Origin: Auanema rhodensis | Taxonomy: Eukaryota > Animalia > Nematoda | DNA: 64,000 nucleotides | Assembly: GCA_964057225.1 (NCBI GenBank) | Contig: OZ059895.1 | Location: 14,446,001 to 14,510,000 of the forward strand | Direction: 5' to 3' | Part shown: in pieces, positions 3,372 through 9,792 of the stretch | Position numbering within the stretch: the first letter of the stretch is position 1 | Layout of the letters: every line of letters begins with the position of its first letter | Program-made: the position numbers and the translations under genes | The notes under the pieces: model-generated | Database searches by the model: none | What the model was told of the DNA's origin: nothing | Seen by the model: the letters and a program-made list of their open reading frames with translations, nothing else

Positions 3372-4136
3372 TTATGACCAAGTACGAGTTGTATCAATAT
3401 AATCACCATCAGGAGATTCGTAATTAGATATAGGTGGGGTTAAAGAAGGTCCTTCGAGAGTATAAGGGAGATTTTCACATGGTTGGATAGCCTAAAAGTA
3501 TCAAAATCGGTTAAAAACGTCAAAGCAATTTTTATAGTATTCACCTTTGACCACAATTCAGGTGAAATTGCTTTTAATTCATCCAAAGCTTTCTTCTGAG
3601 CTTTCAACGCCTTACGCACGTATTCATCATCAAGGCGTTGCAAAGCGTTTCTACTTTTGTTATATTCCTATGAATATCAAAAATGGTATTTTGAAGTATT
3701 TTAAATCAAACCTTTAAAATGACAGCTCTTTCATCTATAGTTTCGTTTGATAATAAAGTTTCTGCACGGTATCGCTCACTGAAACAGGATATTATATTTC
3801 TAGACTATAAAAAAAACATACTGAATATTTTTGGCTGATTTGATATCCAACGTTAATTCATTAATTGGTTTTGGTTTCTTACTATGCTTTTGCATTTGCC
3901 TAATTTCTTTTTCAAGTCTTTTTCTTCTACGAGCTTCTCGTTGTTTAGCAACCTAGAAAAAATGCACTTTATATTATATTATATTATTCTAAAATACCAA
4001 CCTCCGGATCTATTTTCTTCTGTCTTTTCATGAAAATTGAATATGCAGATGTAGTTGTATGGATGGTTCTAATATTTGAAACATCACATGATAAGCTTAA
4101 TTTGCCAACAAGTCGTGAAAGCGAAAGAAGCGACAT
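3372..4136 (-). CDS. mrpl-40: Mitochondrial ribosomal protein mL40
   Basis: Presequence MSLLSLSRLVGKL..., then KRQKKIDPEVAKQREARRKKRLEKEIRQMQKHSKKPKPINE, AQKKALDELKAISPELW, GPSLTPPISNYESPDGDYIDTTRTWS*. ATG sits 4 nt after a TTTTAG acceptor. Confidence 0.92.
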
Positions 4137-4527
4137 TTTACTAAAAATATTCTTTTAGATTCACGTATACTTCAGGAACAAAGAAAAAATGAGAACTTGT
4201 TTACGATAATACAAAATTTAAGTTGGACTGAAGCGCGCTACAATTATAATATCCTGCGCTGTTCCTAAAGTCCCCCTCAATTCCCAACAAACCAAACATT
4301 TTTACACCCTGCGACAACGTTATTTGGTAAAAAACGTAGGTTTTCAAATTATTGTTTCATCTATTTAACTGACGATACATCAAATAATTAAGCTGTAACG
4401 GATAAGACGGTTAGGTATAAACATGGTGAGAAATCAAAAATTCCAAAAATATGAATATGATTTAAATACCCAACATAATCGCTTGATTCTCTGCAGAGTT
4501 GACAAGTGTTAGCTTGTGGGGCCGATT
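4137..4527. promoter_or_regulatory. Probable bidirectional promoter between mrpl-40 and the C2H2/MULE gene
   Basis: About 390 bp between divergent ATGs, with CG-containing motifs (AAGCGCGCT, CCTGCGC, CCTGCGA) in an AT-rich background. Confidence 0.55.
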
Positions 4528-7500
4528 ATGCCTCGTTCCACAACACAATTAAATGTAGAACCTTCATCATCATGCTTAACCGAACAAGGAAGATCGCACA
4601 TGCTAACTTGTTAGTTTTAAAGGTCTAAGAAATAGCTAAATTTGTCTTTACAGTGAATGAGAGCGCGAATGTTTCCATTGATTCGGATAGTAGGGTAATG
4701 AAATCTTATATTATGTATATATATGTACAAAGATATTTCAGCCTTCAAATTCGGACTATGCTAATGATGGCAGAAAAAGGCGTTCAGCGGCTTTGTTAAG
4801 ACTACCTATTGAGTAAGTTACCTTGATGACTTATAGGATGATTACCTTTTTAATTTTAGTGATGAGGGTGCACATTATTTTCCTTGTCCAGTGAAACATT
4901 GTGATTCTGTGGCTAGCACCAGGTTAGAACGGAATCATCACATGAGAACGTACCATTCCGGCTATGTATATAAGGATGGTGATGGTGCGAATAAGGCTAG
5001 AAAAATAGATACTAGATATAGTAGAAGAGTAATTATTGCATGAACTCAGTATATTTTAGTTTTTTTTATTTAGAACAATATGGAACAATCATTAGATAGC
5101 AAAAGTAAAATAGAAGATGTCGATGATGATGACTTGGTTCATGTTACATGTGATTTACCCAGTGAACGTATTGGTAAAGCGCGTGGTGGTTTGTTAGATA
5201 TGTGTGACCAAGAGCCTAACTTAGATGAAGATATTACTACTTTAACGAAACTAGTGGGTTTTGACTTTTTCTTTAAATCTGATTTTGTTTATATAGAACA
5301 GCGCTGGAAAAGAATCCACTCGAGAAACGAAACGTCGACGAGGGCGTCCTCGTAATCCACCCGGTACTGAGCCGGGACCAAATTCAAAAGTTCGAATTAG
5401 CGATCCTGAAGGTATATACCGGTGCTATGTTCCGGAATGCAACTGGAGAGGTGGCTATCGTTCCATCCGAGCTGATCATATGAAATGGTGTCATAAGGAC
5501 TGGACTCTACCTCCACGCTATATTTTACACGTAATAAGTGTTGATGGGATATATGTATATTTAAGTATTACTTTTCAGAGAGTTTCAAGAGAAGGTGCCT
5601 ATTTAGATCCTGCCCAGTTTGAGCCCGAATATTCTTGTTTAGTTGAGGGTTGTCCCTGGAAAGGAAACTTTAGGTATTTTGTTAGTTTTCTTGCCCATTC
5701 AATTTGAAATTTAGAGCCTCGCGTTCCACTCATATGAAGGTGGCTCACCCGGAATTCCAACCTATGCGTAAAAAAGCTCCTGCTGGAGGTTTCATGCCTG
5801 ATGGAAAATATGTTTGCCATGAGCCATCGTGTGGATGGAGAGGAGCTTCACGATCCACGAGAGCAGCTCACATGAAACGACAACATCCAGGCTATATTAA
5901 TCCCGTTTACACTCAACGGAATGTAAGAAAACCTGCTGGTCTTCGATTGAATTTTCTGATTTTAGCTCCCATGTTGTGATTGCAATGTTCAATGTCCATC
6001 TCACAAGGCTTTTGTTGATCATATGGTGTGCGAGCATAGAATCGGTGGAATTGTTCAAAGGGAATTCACTGATGTTCGAGATTACGAGGTATCAATACTG
6101 TTAATTTTTGTTCTCACAGAATATTACAGGAATGGTTTGATGCTGTACAAGAATCTTTTTCTGTTGAGTACGTGAAGAGAATGGGCATAAAGCAAACTGA
6201 ACTCTATCAAGTTTTATATTTGTACTGTTCACGGAGTGGTGGATATCGTCCTAAACGAACAAGATCTTCAATACCATATGTATCGGAGTATACAAAACGG
6301 AGGTGTTTCAGAACTCTCAATAAGTGTGGAAGGAACTGTGCAGCTTTCTTACGCGTATAATGCAATTCTTTAAAGGAAGTTATCTTTATTTTTGAAGGTT
6401 GTTCACTGGACTGATGGAAGATTGACTGTTGTGGGTTGTGTTGAACATACTGGTCATCGAATGGGAACAGCTCTCTTGCGGCTATCCCCTTCGGAACGTG
6501 AAGTAATGGATGAATATCTTTACATTCAAGATGATGATACTCCCCTGGAATTGATGATTGATCGCTTGAGAGGTAATAACAGAAAAGGGAGTACATTTAT
6601 TAACCATTAGTCACATTTAGATATGGAAGGGTATACTGCTGATGGATTTGGAGTTATTCCACGGTCATCACCCCAATTGGAGCAGTTTATTCTTAATGCT
6701 GAAAGTGAACATCATTCACTCAATGATTTAGTTAAGGTATTTTAAATTTTTCAGTGTGAAACTAATTTTTGTTTTCAAATTAAGAATTCTAATATGTTCC
6801 AACCCGAATCATTTTTCAATGTGAATCTGTTGGATGATAAAGGAAATCCTTGGCCCGATTGTTTCTCTATAGGCATAATGACAGAGGAAATGAAATCTCT
6901 GTGGACTCAATATAGTAATAGAGCTGTGTGTATAGAGGAGGTAGTGTTCATTTCTATGTTATTTTTGTAAAATTATTTTCTTAAGGTTCGATTAATGATT
7001 TCAAATTGGGATGTTAGTTTAAGCTTTGTTCTTGTATTTGATATAACTGATACTCCTCGGTGTGCCTGCATATACATTTCTCAACATCCGGATAAATCTG
7101 CTCTTCTTCGTCAATTAGCTTCTGTGTAATTTTTTAAATATATGTACATTTACAAAGTTTCAATTTTCAGTAGAAAAGGACCCATTGAAACCTTCGTAAC
7201 AGATTGTTCACCTGAGTGGCCAATTCTTATTGATCAAATATTTGGAGAAAATTCTTATAACTCTGATATCCAAATCGCAGAATGGCATCTTTTATTGGAT
7301 TGGGCTAATCAAGTAGATCAAATGGTTGTTAACCGAGTGGATAAATTTTCTATTTTATGTGCTCTGCGTCGTTGGCTTAGGTATGCTCAAGTTTTCTTTG
7401 AAAACATGTATGTTCTTTCGATTCAGAGCTTCTGATCCCACATTATTCGAAGCAATGATTATTGATTTGTTCGAGGCCTTCCGGGAAATGGAATTAGATG

Positions 7501-8744
7501 AACTAGCACAATCCATTGATCTTCAGCTGACTGACCCTGAGTATTCTAAAAGGTTGTTTTATATTAAACATTATTTTATTAATTCATTAACCAAATTTAG
7601 ATGGACTCCTTTAATTCGAAACCCTTTAACCGCTCATCACAATCCCATTTTAGAAATTGCGTCTCGGTAAGTAAAATAAAATTTTCTATAATCTCTGTTA
7701 TAGCTCCGTTATTTTATAAATGTTTCTATAAACTGATATCACAACCGTACTGTAATGTTATTTGAAAAGTAAATAGCAATACCGGTTTTTTCATACTTGA
7801 TGCTCAAAATACTAAATTTGTTTTTAACCATAGTAATTCACTCTTATGAGTATTGTGAGGGAGCTTTGAGACAACTGTTATCAAGCTAATACGATAAATT
7901 TAGTTTTTCTTTATAGAATGTTCCGGGAACGTTATTTAAATTGTGAAATATGCTCAAGAATTGACGAATATGTTGGTCTGATTATTCAACGGATTGCAGA
8001 ATTCAATAATGTTGCTGTAAGTTGATTGCTTATTAACATCTCTAATTGTTCTTTGTTAAAGATGTCTGATGTATACTCAACAGGAGCAGTCGAACCAATG
8101 CGAGTCGTTCCTCCTTTATATGAGGATGTGTATGTTTTATGCCTTTTATAGTTTGTTTAACAACAAAGTTACAGAGATCCAGGTAATGTGATGGCAGATG
8201 GTTCACTTGTTGGTTCTTGTCCTACCCAGTATGCTAGATGATTATGGTTGTGGTATTAATTTCTGATTTTTCAGGATTGTGGATCAAGATAGTAGTTTGG
8301 GAGGTATAAAGTTGGGGGAAGAATTTCCACCTCATCGCGAAGAAGAAATTGTTGAAGAGGTTATAATAGAAGAACAAATAATTGAAGGTCCCGAAGCAAT
8401 GCAGGTAATGGTATTACAAGAGATAAATACAATGTTATATTGTTCTCAGATTGTGGAGGAATCTTTAACCAATCTTCATTATCCTTCTACATCTTCTAAT
8501 GTTGAAGATGAAACGGAATGTGACCGGAAGATTCGAATAAATCAAATGATGCAGGTAGGCATTTTTAATAAAGTTTAGTGCATAATATCAGCTTCAGAGG
8601 TTAAAAGAAAAAATGGAGACTTTATCAGATGACGGTGCTATGGAGCTAATGGAGTCAAGTTTATCTCAGGTTGTAAGCCATTTAGATCGTTCCATCCCTC
8701 TTGGCGTGAAAGAGGAACAGATATCAAATTCATCTAATGAATAA
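4528..8744 (+). CDS. C2H2 zinc-finger protein fused to a Mutator/MULE transposase-like domain (probably domesticated)
   Basis: Five C2H2-type fingers (CPVKHC..HMRTYH, CYVPEC..HMKWCH, CLVEGC..HMKVAH, CHEPSC..HMKRQH, CCDC..HMVCEH). MULE N-terminal YCSRSG...C.AFL.V...V..C..HTGH module. Core FSIGIMT..AVCIEE..FVTD..IAEWH..RWTP..HNPILE..RERYL..RID. Acidic tail. Roughly 20 short introns, open frame to TAA 8742-8744. Confidence 0.82.
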
Positions 8745-9192: not shown

Positions 9193-9323
9193 TCGCGGAC
9201 TTTCAACACGACTTTGCACATCTGTGGCGATTTCGTCTGTATGTTTCCGCAATAGTGAATCCTGGTGGGATTCGCTAGCACCGCGTCTCGTGACCGGAGT
9301 TTGATAGTACCCCATCAACAATT
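9193..9323 (+). ncRNA. Intronic box H/ACA snoRNA, predicted guide for LSU rRNA pseudouridylation
   Basis: Hairpin 1 GCGGA...TCCGC, hinge AATAGTGA, hairpin 2 TGGTGGG...CCCATCA followed by ACA+3 nt. The hairpin-2 pocket strands TTCGCTA and TAGTA pair with the conserved LSU sequence UACUA-UC-UAGCGAA. Confidence 0.8.
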
Positions 9324-9337
9324 TTTTTTGTTTCAGA

Positions 9338-9792
9338 ATGTCTGTTGAAACCATTCCACGTGATCTTCGTGGCTTGAGAGCTTGCTTGTTATGTTCATTG
9401 ATAAAAACAATTGATCAATTCGAGCGTGATGGCTGTGAAAACTGTGAAAGAGCTCTTCACATGAAAGGAGATGCTGATAAAGTATACGAATGCACTAGGT
9501 ATTGGGGATACTTCATTGAATGAAAAAATTAAAACATTTTCTCTTTTTAGTCAGAACTTTGATGGAATGATATCAGCAATGCAACCTGATGATTCTTGGG
9601 TCTGCAAATGGCAGGTATTTGAACAATTTTTAAAATTCAATATTAAACAATTTTTTTAAGAAAATAAACCGAAAATGTAAAGGAATGTACGCGGTTTCTG
9701 TTTCTGGATCTCTTCCTTCTTCTGTTGTTTCTGACCTTAAAAGCATGGGTATACGATACACTCCTTATATGCGCGAAACTGCTACCAAGTAA
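9338..9792 (+). CDS. spt-4: Transcription elongation factor SPT4 (DSIF small subunit)
   Basis: [36 protein letters not shown]...[26 protein letters not shown]...[12 protein letters not shown]; 3 coding exons. Confidence 0.97.

What the first reader, a model, noticed from the sequence alone, without database searches (positions are those of the whole stretch)
4528..8744. Intron-rich domesticated Mutator/MULE transposase with extra C2H2 fingers, embedded among housekeeping genes
Seen: an intact frame across about 20 introns, five C2H2 fingers, a MULE-type YCSRSG...C...HxGH DNA-binding module and a transposase-like core. No TIRs or target-site duplications were visible. It shares a promoter with mrpl-40 and sits directly upstream of spt-4. 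Compared by eye with the MULE pattern (VCxD...FMxD...CxWH...TNxxxE), the first Asp reads Glu (AVCIEE), the CxxH Cys reads Ala (IAEWH), the second Asp (FVTD) and the Glu (NPILE) remain, and an acidic tail replaces the SWIM finger. Inference: a catalytically dead transposase co-opted as a transcription or chromatin factor, analogous to plant FAR1/FHY3 and yeast Aft1, and little characterised in nematodes.
Basis: partly seen in the sequence, partly recalled or inferred. Interest (0 to 1): 0.78.

Follow-up and report, generated by a model that had tools for sequence, protein, structure and literature searches.

The report
Tamed Mutator transposase gene attf-3
This is a roundworm's copy of attf-3, a single-copy, intron-rich gene whose protein is an ancient Mutator-type jumping-gene enzyme that kept its DNA-gripping zinc fingers, let its cutting residues decay, and probably now acts as a DNA-binding regulator; the kind is known, but this gene had not been recognised as one.

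Summary
Window 4528-8744 (+) carries a 23-exon, 1006-codon gene with 22 GT-AG introns. It sits between mrpl-40 (divergent) and spt-4 (same strand). It is single-copy in its 181-Mb genome and has no flanking inverted repeats.

It is the ortholog of C. elegans ATTF-3 ("AT hook Transcription Factor family"). Named orthologs come only from clade V nematodes: strongylids, Heterorhabditis, Pristionchus, Mesorhabditis, Diploscapter and Caenorhabditis.

Pfam finds no MULE domain in the exons or in 30 full-length orthologs. A confident AlphaFold model of the hookworm ortholog does show the origin:
- The core matches the IS256-family transposase ISCth4, the bacterial relative of MULEs (Foldseek E 7e-7; Z 12.8-13.6 over about 240 residues). 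The next fold scores Z 9.4.
- The module upstream matches the WRKY-GCM1 domain of yeast Aft2 (Z 5.2).

All six zinc-ligand sets are at least 90% conserved. The catalytic positions drift by lineage, and the C/DxxH motif never has C or D.

A role as a transcription or chromatin factor is inferred, not shown. Novelty: a new member of a known kind. The scan has noted other domesticated transposases and a young tRNA-associated MULE family elsewhere in this genome.

The parts
4528..8744 (+). Whole coding region of the attf-3 ortholog: 23 exons (4528-4609, 4654-4694, 4742-4812, 4860-5028, 5074-5253, 5297-5530, 5579-5673, 5715-5922, 5966-6088, 6130-6354, 6398-6572, 6621-6736, 6785-6940, 6986-7125, 7171-7380, 7427-7552, 7601-7666, 7917-8016, 8062-8129, 8175-8228, 8275-8404, 8450-8554, 8598-8744)
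   Evidence: Frame and GT-AG check; colinear tblastn of orthologs; exon-level identity of 55-85% to the Heterorhabditis ortholog in core exons
4885..4956 (+). C2H2-type finger 1
   Evidence: Pattern located; ligands at least 90% conserved in 30 orthologs; pLDDT about 85-90
5339..5350 (+). AT-hook core (RGRP) in a basic stretch
   Evidence: Present in strongylid and Pristionchus orthologs. A weak Pfam AT_hook hit lies at a different place in C. elegans ATTF-3
5423..6037 (+). C2H2-type fingers 2-5 (5423-5494, 5636-5748 across intron 7, 5815-5886, 5972-6037)
   Evidence: ligand conservation; Foldseek local matches to CTCF and WT1 finger arrays, prob 0.95-0.99
6130..6457 (+). WRKY-GCM1 / FAR1-type zinc module with an insert. 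Ligands: Cys at 6226-6228, Cys at 6337-6339, and His-x-x-His at 6446-6457. Spans intron 10
   Evidence: Model residues 392-500 match the Aft2 DNA-binding domain 4lmg_A: Z 5.2, rmsd 3.4, 73 aligned. Pfam FAR1 at E 0.0069 over profile positions 11-87/90 in the closest ortholog, and in 3 of 30 orthologs. Nearest Atlas clusters are FAR1, ZSWIM3_N, ALS2CR8, GCM, AFT and DBD_Tnp_Mut. Ligands at least 90% conserved
6458..6736 (+). Helical linker ahead of the core; its C-terminal part falls inside the ISCth4 structural match
   Evidence: Helices at 509-574 of the model. The ISCth4 alignment starts at model residue 548
6785..8016 (+). RNase H-like transposase core with an all-helical insertion domain (exons 13-18). 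Catalytic-equivalent codons: Glu 6935-6937 (first Asp position), Asp 7202-7204, A-E-W-H 7277-7288 (C/DxxH position), Glu 7653-7655
   Evidence: beta1-beta2-beta3-alpha1-beta4-alpha2-beta5-alpha3 order at pLDDT about 90. ISCth4: E 6.8e-7, Z 13.6 and 12.8. Atlas features: MULE and ZSWIM1-3 clusters at 0.95. Column analysis
8062..8741 (+). Acidic, mostly disordered tail ending in a conserved pair of helices; no SWIM finger
   Evidence: 36 D+E, 11 K+R and 2 Cys in 167 residues. pLDDT below 50 for 874-973, helices at 974-1016 in the ortholog model
4137..4527 (.). 391-bp divergent intergenic region shared with mrpl-40
   Evidence: Coordinates. Promoter sharing not tested
3443..4136 (-). Neighbour (context): 5' exons of mrpl-40
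   Evidence: Pfam MRP-L28 PF09812 at E 2.3e-8 and 5.5e-6
9338..9789 (+). Neighbour (context): spt-4
   Evidence: Pfam Spt4 PF06093 at E 1.3e-13 on exon 1

Best explanation
The gene is this nematode's ortholog of C. elegans attf-3. It is a host gene that arose, no later than the common ancestor of the clade V (rhabditine) nematodes sampled here, from the transposase of a Mutator-like element. That element belonged to the animal sub-type that carries classic zinc fingers ahead of an insert-containing WRKY-GCM1 finger with an H-x-x-H ligand pair.

The protein keeps a composite DNA-binding N-terminus: an AT hook, five C2H2-type fingers and the WRKY/FAR1-type finger. It also keeps the folded RNase H-like core with its helical insertion domain.

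It has lost the transposon ends, the SWIM finger, the C/D of the C/DxxH motif, and any consistent DDE triad.

It most likely binds specific DNA sites as a nuclear regulator. In that reading the dead core serves as an oligomerisation or DNA/partner-binding scaffold, and the acidic tail with its terminal helices recruits partners, much as in plant FHY3/FAR1.

Shown here: gene structure, copy number, orthology, folds and conservation pattern. Inferred: DNA binding, lack of catalysis, and a regulatory role.
For: Structure of the gene and its setting:
- 23 exons in an intact frame.
- Single copy by protein and by DNA in a 181-Mb genome.
- No TIRs.

Orthology:
- One ortholog per species in most taxa. 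Strongylids, Heterorhabditis, Pristionchus (named attf-3), Diploscapter and Mesorhabditis are.
- Ten Caenorhabditis species are, including C. elegans NP_001254828.1, 'AT hook Transcription Factor family'.
- Public predictions in Heterorhabditis, Dictyocaulus, Pristionchus and C. angaria run into Spt4, so the attf-3/spt-4 adjacency is old.

Folds:
- The core is closest to ISCth4: Foldseek E 6.8e-7; Z 13.6, rmsd 4.2, 242 aligned. In a search that did not use Foldseek it is again first, at Z 12.8. Next come integrase cores at Z 9.4, Tn5 8.5, Hermes 7.4, P element 6.3, RAG1 5.7 and Transib 5.3.
- ISCth4 belongs to IS256, the accepted prokaryotic kin of MULEs (PMC7780238).
- The Aft2 WRKY-GCM1 domain matches model residues 392-500.

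Conservation:
- Zinc ligands of all six modules are at least 90% conserved.
- The catalytic columns vary by lineage.

Background and phenotypes:
- The ancestral architecture, and the idea of fixed MULE-derived factors in Caenorhabditis, are described in PMC1702500.
- C. elegans RNAi phenotypes exist: lifespan of glp-1 animals -46% (PMC8753122), and a polyQ aggregation modifier (PMC3248563).
Against: - No Pfam MULE match in the exons, in the six-frame genome scan, or in any of 30 orthologs.
- hhalign against the genome's own MULE transposase found nothing, and a profile search of PDB sequences found only zinc fingers. The link to MULEs therefore rests on predicted structure, language-model features and motifs, not on sequence statistics.
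- The model is of the hookworm ortholog, not of the window's protein.
- The Aft2 match (Z 5.2) and the FAR1 hits are modest.
- No binding, localisation or expression data exist for this species. Nothing measured shows that catalysis is absent, and one Pristionchus species retains D, D and E.
Confidence: 0.78

Rival explanations
1. The protein is domesticated but still catalytic. It would be a site-specific nuclease or recombinase used by the host, as with RAG1, Kat1 or ciliate excisases.
For: Three acidic residues occupy the triad positions in this window (E, D, E). A full D, D, E is seen in Pristionchus fissidentatus. The second Asp is kept in 27 of 30 orthologs, and the fold around the site is highly conserved.
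Against: - No single triad is conserved. All ten Caenorhabditis species lack the Glu, three Pristionchus have Asn at the first position, and two Mesorhabditis paralogs lack the second Asp.
- The C/D of the C/DxxH motif is A, S or T in every ortholog. That motif is reported as important for catalysis in transposases with helical insertion domains (PMC7780238).
Confidence: 0.07
2. The fold is transposase-derived, but the protein's main role is not gene regulation on DNA. It could, for example, be a cytoplasmic scaffold in endocytosis or proteostasis.
For: ATTF-3 is listed among putative endocytosis-related miR-60 targets (PMC5076448) and among polyQ aggregation modifiers (PMC3248563). A preprint reports a CCT-like domain in it.
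Against: Six conserved zinc modules of DNA-binding types plus an AT hook are the best-conserved parts of the protein. The phenotypes cited are equally expected from a regulator.
Confidence: 0.08
3. The core is an RNase H-like domain of some other origin (hAT, P, Transib, integrase, or a convergent fold), not MULE.
For: There is no significant sequence match to PF10551 or PF21056. Identity to ISCth4 is only 8-11%.
Against: - ISCth4 leads both structure searches by more than 3 Z units and covers about 240 residues, including the insertion domain.
- The nearest language-model clusters are all MULE, ZSWIM1-3 or SWIM.
- The upstream finger is of the type found in MULE transposases (PMC1702500).
- Motif order and spacing parallel ISCth4: D175, D241, C262/H265, E348.
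Confidence: 0.05
4. It is a live or recently dead Mutator transposon copy.
For: The same genome does hold a young MULE family.
Against: That family is a different protein: intronless, 95-100% identical copies, and matched by PF10551. This gene has 22 introns, one copy, no TIRs, and orthologs next to spt-4 in distant genera.
Confidence: 0.01

Closest known systems
C. elegans ATTF-3 (NP_001254828.1, UniProt G4S460; from memory F54C4.3)
   Same: Ortholog. Colinear similarity runs across fingers, WRKY module, core and tail, and it lies next to spt-4 in relatives.
   Different: About 25-35% identity in core exons. C. elegans keeps Asp at the first catalytic position but has Gly at the Glu position. 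Databases name it only as an AT-hook / C2H2 protein, with no transposase annotation.
Plant FHY3/FAR1 (and MUSTANG) domesticated MULE transposases
   Same: FAR1-type WRKY-GCM1 finger, then a MULE core kept as a folded non-mobile domain; single-copy host genes acting (in plants) as transcription factors.
   Different: An independent domestication in animals. It has five extra C2H2-type fingers and an AT hook, no SWIM finger, H-x-x-H instead of H-x-H, and Pfam FAR1 and MULE models below threshold.
Yeast Aft1/Aft2 iron regulators
   Same: The insert-containing WRKY-GCM1 DNA-binding domain is the best structural match for model residues 392-500 (4lmg_A, Z 5.2).
   Different: The Aft proteins kept only the finger. 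This protein also kept the whole transposase core.
ISCth4 / IS256-family transposase (PDB 6xg8, 6xgx, 6xgw)
   Same: RNase H-like catalytic domain with a four-helix insertion domain; the same order and similar spacing of D, D, C/DxxH and E positions.
   Different: ISCth4 is an active bacterial copy-out/paste-in enzyme with an HTH N-terminus. Identity is 8-11%, and here the catalytic motifs are degenerate.
Animal MULE transposases with classic zinc fingers ahead of an H-x-x-H WRKY-GCM1 finger (Babu et al. 2006, PMC1702500)
   Same: Same module order and the same H-x-x-H signature. That paper already proposed that fixed derivatives in Caenorhabditis act as transcription factors.
   Different: Those are described as mobile, expanded elements with two fingers, or as solo fingers. 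This gene has five fingers plus a retained core, and is not named in that paper's main text.
Vertebrate and invertebrate ZSWIM1-3 and CARF/ALS2CR8
   Same: Animal host genes with a MULE-type RNase H-like domain and a FAR1-like N-terminal module; they are among the nearest language-model clusters.
   Different: They carry SWIM fingers or an ALS2CR8 domain and match Pfam models. No sequence-level link to them was found here.

Membership tests
Mutator/MULE-IS256 transposase superfamily (by descent) | RNase H-like catalytic fold interrupted after beta5 by an all-helical insertion domain, closest to IS256/MULE enzymes | tested here: met
   AlphaFold model of ortholog P0001, core pLDDT about 90. ISCth4 is first in Foldseek (E 6.8e-7), in VIA (Z 13.6) and in the VIA wide search (Z 12.8 against 9.4 for the next fold).
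Mutator/MULE-IS256 transposase superfamily (by descent) | Significant sequence match to the Pfam MULE domain PF10551 (or PF21056) | tested here: not met
   No hit in the exons, in 30 orthologs at E up to 1, or at this locus in six-frame scans of the genome.
Mutator/MULE-IS256 transposase superfamily (by descent) | N-terminal WRKY-GCM1 / FAR1-type zinc finger | tested here: met
   CCHH ligands at least 90% conserved. Aft2 domain at Z 5.2 over 73 residues. Pfam FAR1 below cut-off (17.5 bits against 28.1) in 3 of 30 orthologs. Coherent WRKY-GCM1 clan among nearest Atlas clusters at 0.76-0.87. Each line is modest on its own.
Active MULE transposase / autonomous element | Intact DDE triad | tested here: not met
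   The window reads E, D, E. Across 30 orthologs the first position is E, D or N, and the third is E, D, S, A, G or L. Residue equivalence was inferred from secondary-structure order and motif spacing, not from a residue-level superposition.
Active MULE transposase / autonomous element | C/DxxH motif at the start of the insertion domain | tested here: not met
   A-E-W-H here. The first position is A, S or T in all orthologs, and the His is lost in Caenorhabditis.
Active MULE transposase / autonomous element | Terminal inverted repeats with target-site duplication | tested here: not met
   Only short AT-rich chance pairs, none bracketing the gene.
Active MULE transposase / autonomous element | Multiple dispersed copies | tested here: not met
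   Exons 10, 11 and 15, and the 4.2-kb DNA, each match only this locus in the 181-Mb genome.
Domesticated (exapted) transposase gene | Single-copy orthologs kept over long evolutionary time with an intact frame | tested here: met
   Orthologs of about 1000-1350 residues in six clade V lineages. Mesorhabditis spiculigera has several paralogs.
Domesticated (exapted) transposase gene | Conserved genomic neighbourhood | tested here: inconclusive
   Adjacency to spt-4 is implied by fused predictions carrying PF06093 in Heterorhabditis, Dictyocaulus, Pristionchus and C. angaria. The mrpl-40 side was not tested in other species.
Domesticated (exapted) transposase gene | Purifying selection (dN/dS well below 1) | not testable with these tools
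   No coding DNA of close relatives could be fetched. Only protein-level conservation is available.
ATTF-3 orthogroup | Full-length colinear similarity to C. elegans ATTF-3 and its named orthologs | tested here: met
   tblastn of P. pacificus attf-3 and C. japonica proteins onto exons 6-18. C. elegans protein identified. Exon-level identities.
Plant FHY3/FAR1 family | Pfam FAR1 + MULE + SWIM architecture above thresholds | tested here: not met
   FAR1 is sub-threshold, MULE is absent, and there is no SWIM finger. It works like this family but is not a member.

The most novel reading that the evidence does not exclude
ATTF-3 proteins still recognise Mutator-type transposon ends through their retained WRKY finger and core. 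They would then act as a host-encoded regulator of resident MULEs. In this genome those form a young family lying beside tRNA genes. Alternatively, in lineages that keep three acidic residues, they would still cut DNA at specific host sites.
Probability: 0.07. Interest if true: 0.7.

Novelty: new member of a known kind. Interest (0 to 1): 0.45.

Why it matters
A gene conserved across clade V nematodes, including C. elegans and hookworms, gains an origin and a domain map that sequence databases do not give it. Databases label ATTF-3 only as an AT-hook or C2H2 protein, yet it shows strong RNAi phenotypes in lifespan and protein-aggregation screens.

Recognising it as a MULE-derived protein makes testable predictions in a genetically tractable animal:
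- DNA binding through the WRKY finger and the C2H2 array.
- Oligomerisation through the dead core.
- Dispensability of the former catalytic residues.

It also adds an old, independent animal case to the short list of Mutator domestications (FHY3/FAR1, MUSTANG, Aft1/2, ZSWIM, CARF).

Tried and rejected
- Exon-by-exon Pfam scans found nothing useful.
- Pfam on full-length orthologs gave no MULE hit and only weak finger and FAR1 hits.
- A profile search of PDB sequences returned only generic zinc fingers.
- hhalign of the family alignment against the genome's own MULE transposase gave probability 0.07 on an irrelevant stretch.
- The word-based protein search seeded with that MULE, meant to build a MULE profile for a profile-profile test, returned no hits, so that test could not be made.
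- Six-frame scans of the own genome with PF03101 and PF21056 did not touch this locus.
- A second AlphaFold job on a naturally truncated ortholog (P0017), meant to isolate the WRKY module, gave pLDDT 35-70 there and was not searched.
- An Rfam scan found nothing inside the gene, including the odd 250-nt intron.
- The joined spliced protein of this window has no reference, so it was not sent to any search or fold tool. Database orthologs served as proxies. The joined translation was used only inside scripts, to check the frame and to convert motif positions to coordinates.
- The live-transposon and pseudogene readings were considered and rejected on copy number, introns and orthology.
Full report
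**What is in the sequence**

Between 4528 and 8744 on the plus strand, three-frame translation plus GT-AG splicing gives a gene of 23 exons and 22 introns. Twenty-one introns are 41-48 nt, typical of nematodes, and one is 250 nt. The joined frame is open for 1006 codons.

Full-length orthologous proteins from public databases align colinearly to exons 4-23 by tblastn. Exon-level identities reach 70-85% to the Heterorhabditis protein in the core exons. Exon 3 resembles orthologs by eye. Exons 1-2 and the start codon rest only on frame and splice signals.

Upstream on the minus strand are exons matching Pfam MRP-L28 (the MRPL40 family). Downstream on the plus strand is Spt4. The two divergent start codons are 391 bp apart.

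Exons were searched singly by reference, and database orthologs stood in for the whole protein. Only scripts used the joined translation, to check the frame and to map motifs.

**Identity**

A scan of 1.84 billion representative proteins with exon 15 gave 15 hits. All the long, named ones are clade V nematode proteins of about 900-1200 residues.

Word-based searches with two of them added more:
- strongylids (Necator, Haemonchus and others), Heterorhabditis and Diploscapter;
- four Pristionchus species, one entry named attf-3;
- ten Caenorhabditis species, including C. elegans NP_001254828.1, 'AT hook Transcription Factor family', UniProt G4S460, on chromosome III.

Predictions in Heterorhabditis, Dictyocaulus, Pristionchus pacificus and C. 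angaria run on into an Spt4 domain. This shows that attf-3 lies just upstream of spt-4 on the same strand in those genera too.

**Not a transposon**

- Exons 10, 11 and 15, and the whole 4.2-kb DNA, match only this locus in the 181-Mb assembly.
- No inverted repeats bracket the gene.
- By contrast, a six-frame scan with Pfam MULE finds at least twelve copies of a different, intronless open frame of 658-701 residues elsewhere in the genome, 95-100% identical to each other.
- That scan does not touch this locus.

**Is the core a Mutator transposase?**

Sequence statistics say nothing. Pfam gives no MULE hit for the exons or for any of 30 orthologs at E up to 1. A family profile finds only zinc fingers among PDB sequences. 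hhalign against the genome's own MULE finds nothing.

Structure does answer the question. An AlphaFold2 model of the Ancylostoma caninum ortholog, built on a 22-sequence alignment, has pLDDT of about 85-95 across residues 390-860. It shows the strand-helix order beta1-beta2-beta3-alpha1-beta4-alpha2-beta5-alpha3, followed by a helical bundle.

| Search | Best match | Next matches |
|---|---|---|
| Foldseek vs PDB | ISCth4 transposase chains, E 6.8e-7 to 6e-5, probability 1.0 | P element, foamy-virus integrase, Hermes |
| VIA-align re-scoring | ISCth4, Z 13.6, rmsd 4.2 Å, 242 residues, model 548-845 | integrase cores, Z 9.4 or less |
| VIA-align vs 48,161 representatives, no Foldseek | ISCth4, Z 12.8 | integrase cores 9.4, Tn5 8.5, Hermes 7.4, P element 6.3, RAG1 5.7, Transib 5.3, piggyBac 5.2 |

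ISCth4 belongs to IS256, the bacterial family long held to be kin of eukaryotic MULEs. It has DDE residues D175, D241 and E348, and a C262/H265 motif at the start of its helical insertion domain (PMC7780238). The order and spacing of the corresponding motifs here are parallel.

A language-model feature search with residues 400-900 of the ortholog returns, as nearest named clusters, only MULE, ZSWIM1-3 RNase H-like and SWIM families. The top score is 0.95, a value that shuffled proteins reach about once in 100.

**The DNA-binding modules**

The stretch ahead of the core has conserved Cys, Cys, His-x-x-His ligands.
- Model residues 392-500 align to the DNA-bound WRKY-GCM1 domain of yeast Aft2 (4lmg_A, Z 5.2, rmsd 3.4 Å, 73 residues, 15% identity).
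- Pfam FAR1 matches sub-threshold in 3 of 30 orthologs. In the closest one it scores E 0.0069 over profile positions 11-87 of 90.
- Its nearest feature clusters are FAR1, ZSWIM3_N, ALS2CR8, GCM, AFT and DBD_Tnp_Mut, at 0.76-0.87.

Each line is modest, but together they agree.

Babu and colleagues (PMC1702500) described animal MULE transposases with classic zinc fingers ahead of an insert-containing WRKY-GCM1 finger whose histidines are two residues apart. They also proposed that fixed derivatives in Caenorhabditis serve as transcription factors. This gene fits that ancestry but is not named in their main text.

The five C2H2-type fingers are confidently modelled and match CTCF-like arrays locally.

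**What selection has kept**

Across 30 orthologs, the ligands of all five C2H2-type fingers and of the WRKY module are at least 90% conserved. So are several residues of the insertion domain.

The catalytic columns are not conserved:

| Position | Residues seen |
|---|---|
| First acidic | Glu in strongylids, Heterorhabditis and this window; Asp in Caenorhabditis; Asn in three Pristionchus |
| Second Asp | kept in 27 of 30 |
| C/DxxH, first residue | Ala, Ser or Thr in all |
| Glu | Gly, Ala, Ser or Leu in every Caenorhabditis |

Different lineages having lost different catalytic residues, while the fold and the fingers persist, is the pattern expected of a non-catalytic domesticated transposase. 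Residue equivalence was read from secondary-structure order and motif spacing, not from a residue-level superposition.

The tail after the core is acidic (36 D+E in 167 residues). It lacks a SWIM finger and ends in two conserved helices.

**Likely function**

The best reading is a nuclear DNA-binding regulator built like plant FHY3/FAR1. The composite finger array would select sites, the dead core would provide oligomerisation or further DNA or partner contacts, and the acidic tail would recruit partners. None of this is measured.

In C. elegans the gene appears only in screens and lists:
- RNAi shortens glp-1 lifespan by 46% at day 19 (PMC8753122).
- It modifies polyQ aggregation (PMC3248563).
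- It is a candidate miR-60 target (PMC5076448).
- It is among regulators flagged in a starvation atlas.

No paper in the searchable library links it to transposases.

**Verdict**

This is a new member of a known kind: a remote-homology annotation of a conserved but little-studied nematode gene. It is of moderate interest mainly because C. elegans genetics can now test it.

Other notes of this scan report further domesticated transposases and a tRNA-associated MULE family in the same genome. I did not rely on them. My own brief look agrees that the young MULE copies lie beside tRNA genes.

Noticed in passing
window 9193-9323 (+): Rfam ceN58 H/ACA snoRNA match (51.7 bits, E 3.7e-8, below the gathering score of 60) in the spacer between attf-3 and the spt-4 start codon. 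It overlaps another first-stage note.
   Followed up: partly
L002-L011, e.g. L005:289-2355 (G000:C6:11316531-11319809): A young MULE family in the same genome: at least 12 loci, with intronless open frames of 658-701 residues, 95-100% identical to each other. Pfam MULE scores 26-31 bits. Clear D, D, C-x-x-H and E motifs are visible by eye. The word-based protein search found no relatives.
   Followed up: partly
L003, L005, L008, L010, L011: Five of seven MULE loci examined have tRNA genes within a few hundred bases of the transposase frame: tandem tRNA-Ser, tRNA-Met, tRNA-Asp and tRNA-Glu. This agrees with earlier scan notes on tRNA-associated MULEs.
   Followed up: partly
G000:C6:11318031-11321717 (+) and 11388895-11392581 (-): Two pairs of MULE copies in mirror orientation about 70 kb apart, suggesting an inverted segmental duplication that carries the tRNA-Ser arrays.
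   Followed up: no
L014, L015 (G000:C4:17585645-17591896 and 16263785-16270006): Broken copies of the same MULE family: frames split into pieces of 241-390 residues.
   Followed up: partly
L016-L019 (G000 C5:15247675, C6:6276470, C7:5677973, C7:15511590): Four weak sub-threshold Pfam FAR1 matches (18-23 bits) elsewhere in the genome. They may be other WRKY/FAR1-type finger genes or relics.
   Followed up: no
window 7667-7916: Intron 17 is 250 nt, while the other 21 introns are 41-48 nt. There is no Rfam match in it.
   Followed up: partly
public proteins P0020, P0026, P0030, P0032, P0038, P0056: Gene predictions in several nematode genomes fuse attf-3 with spt-4 (one also with an Nramp domain). 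UniProt therefore names some of them 'Transcription elongation factor SPT4'. These are likely annotation errors.
   Followed up: no
public proteins P0007, P0008, P0035, P0040: Mesorhabditis spiculigera has at least four diverged paralogs of this otherwise single-copy gene. Two have lost the second catalytic Asp or the fourth finger region.
   Followed up: no
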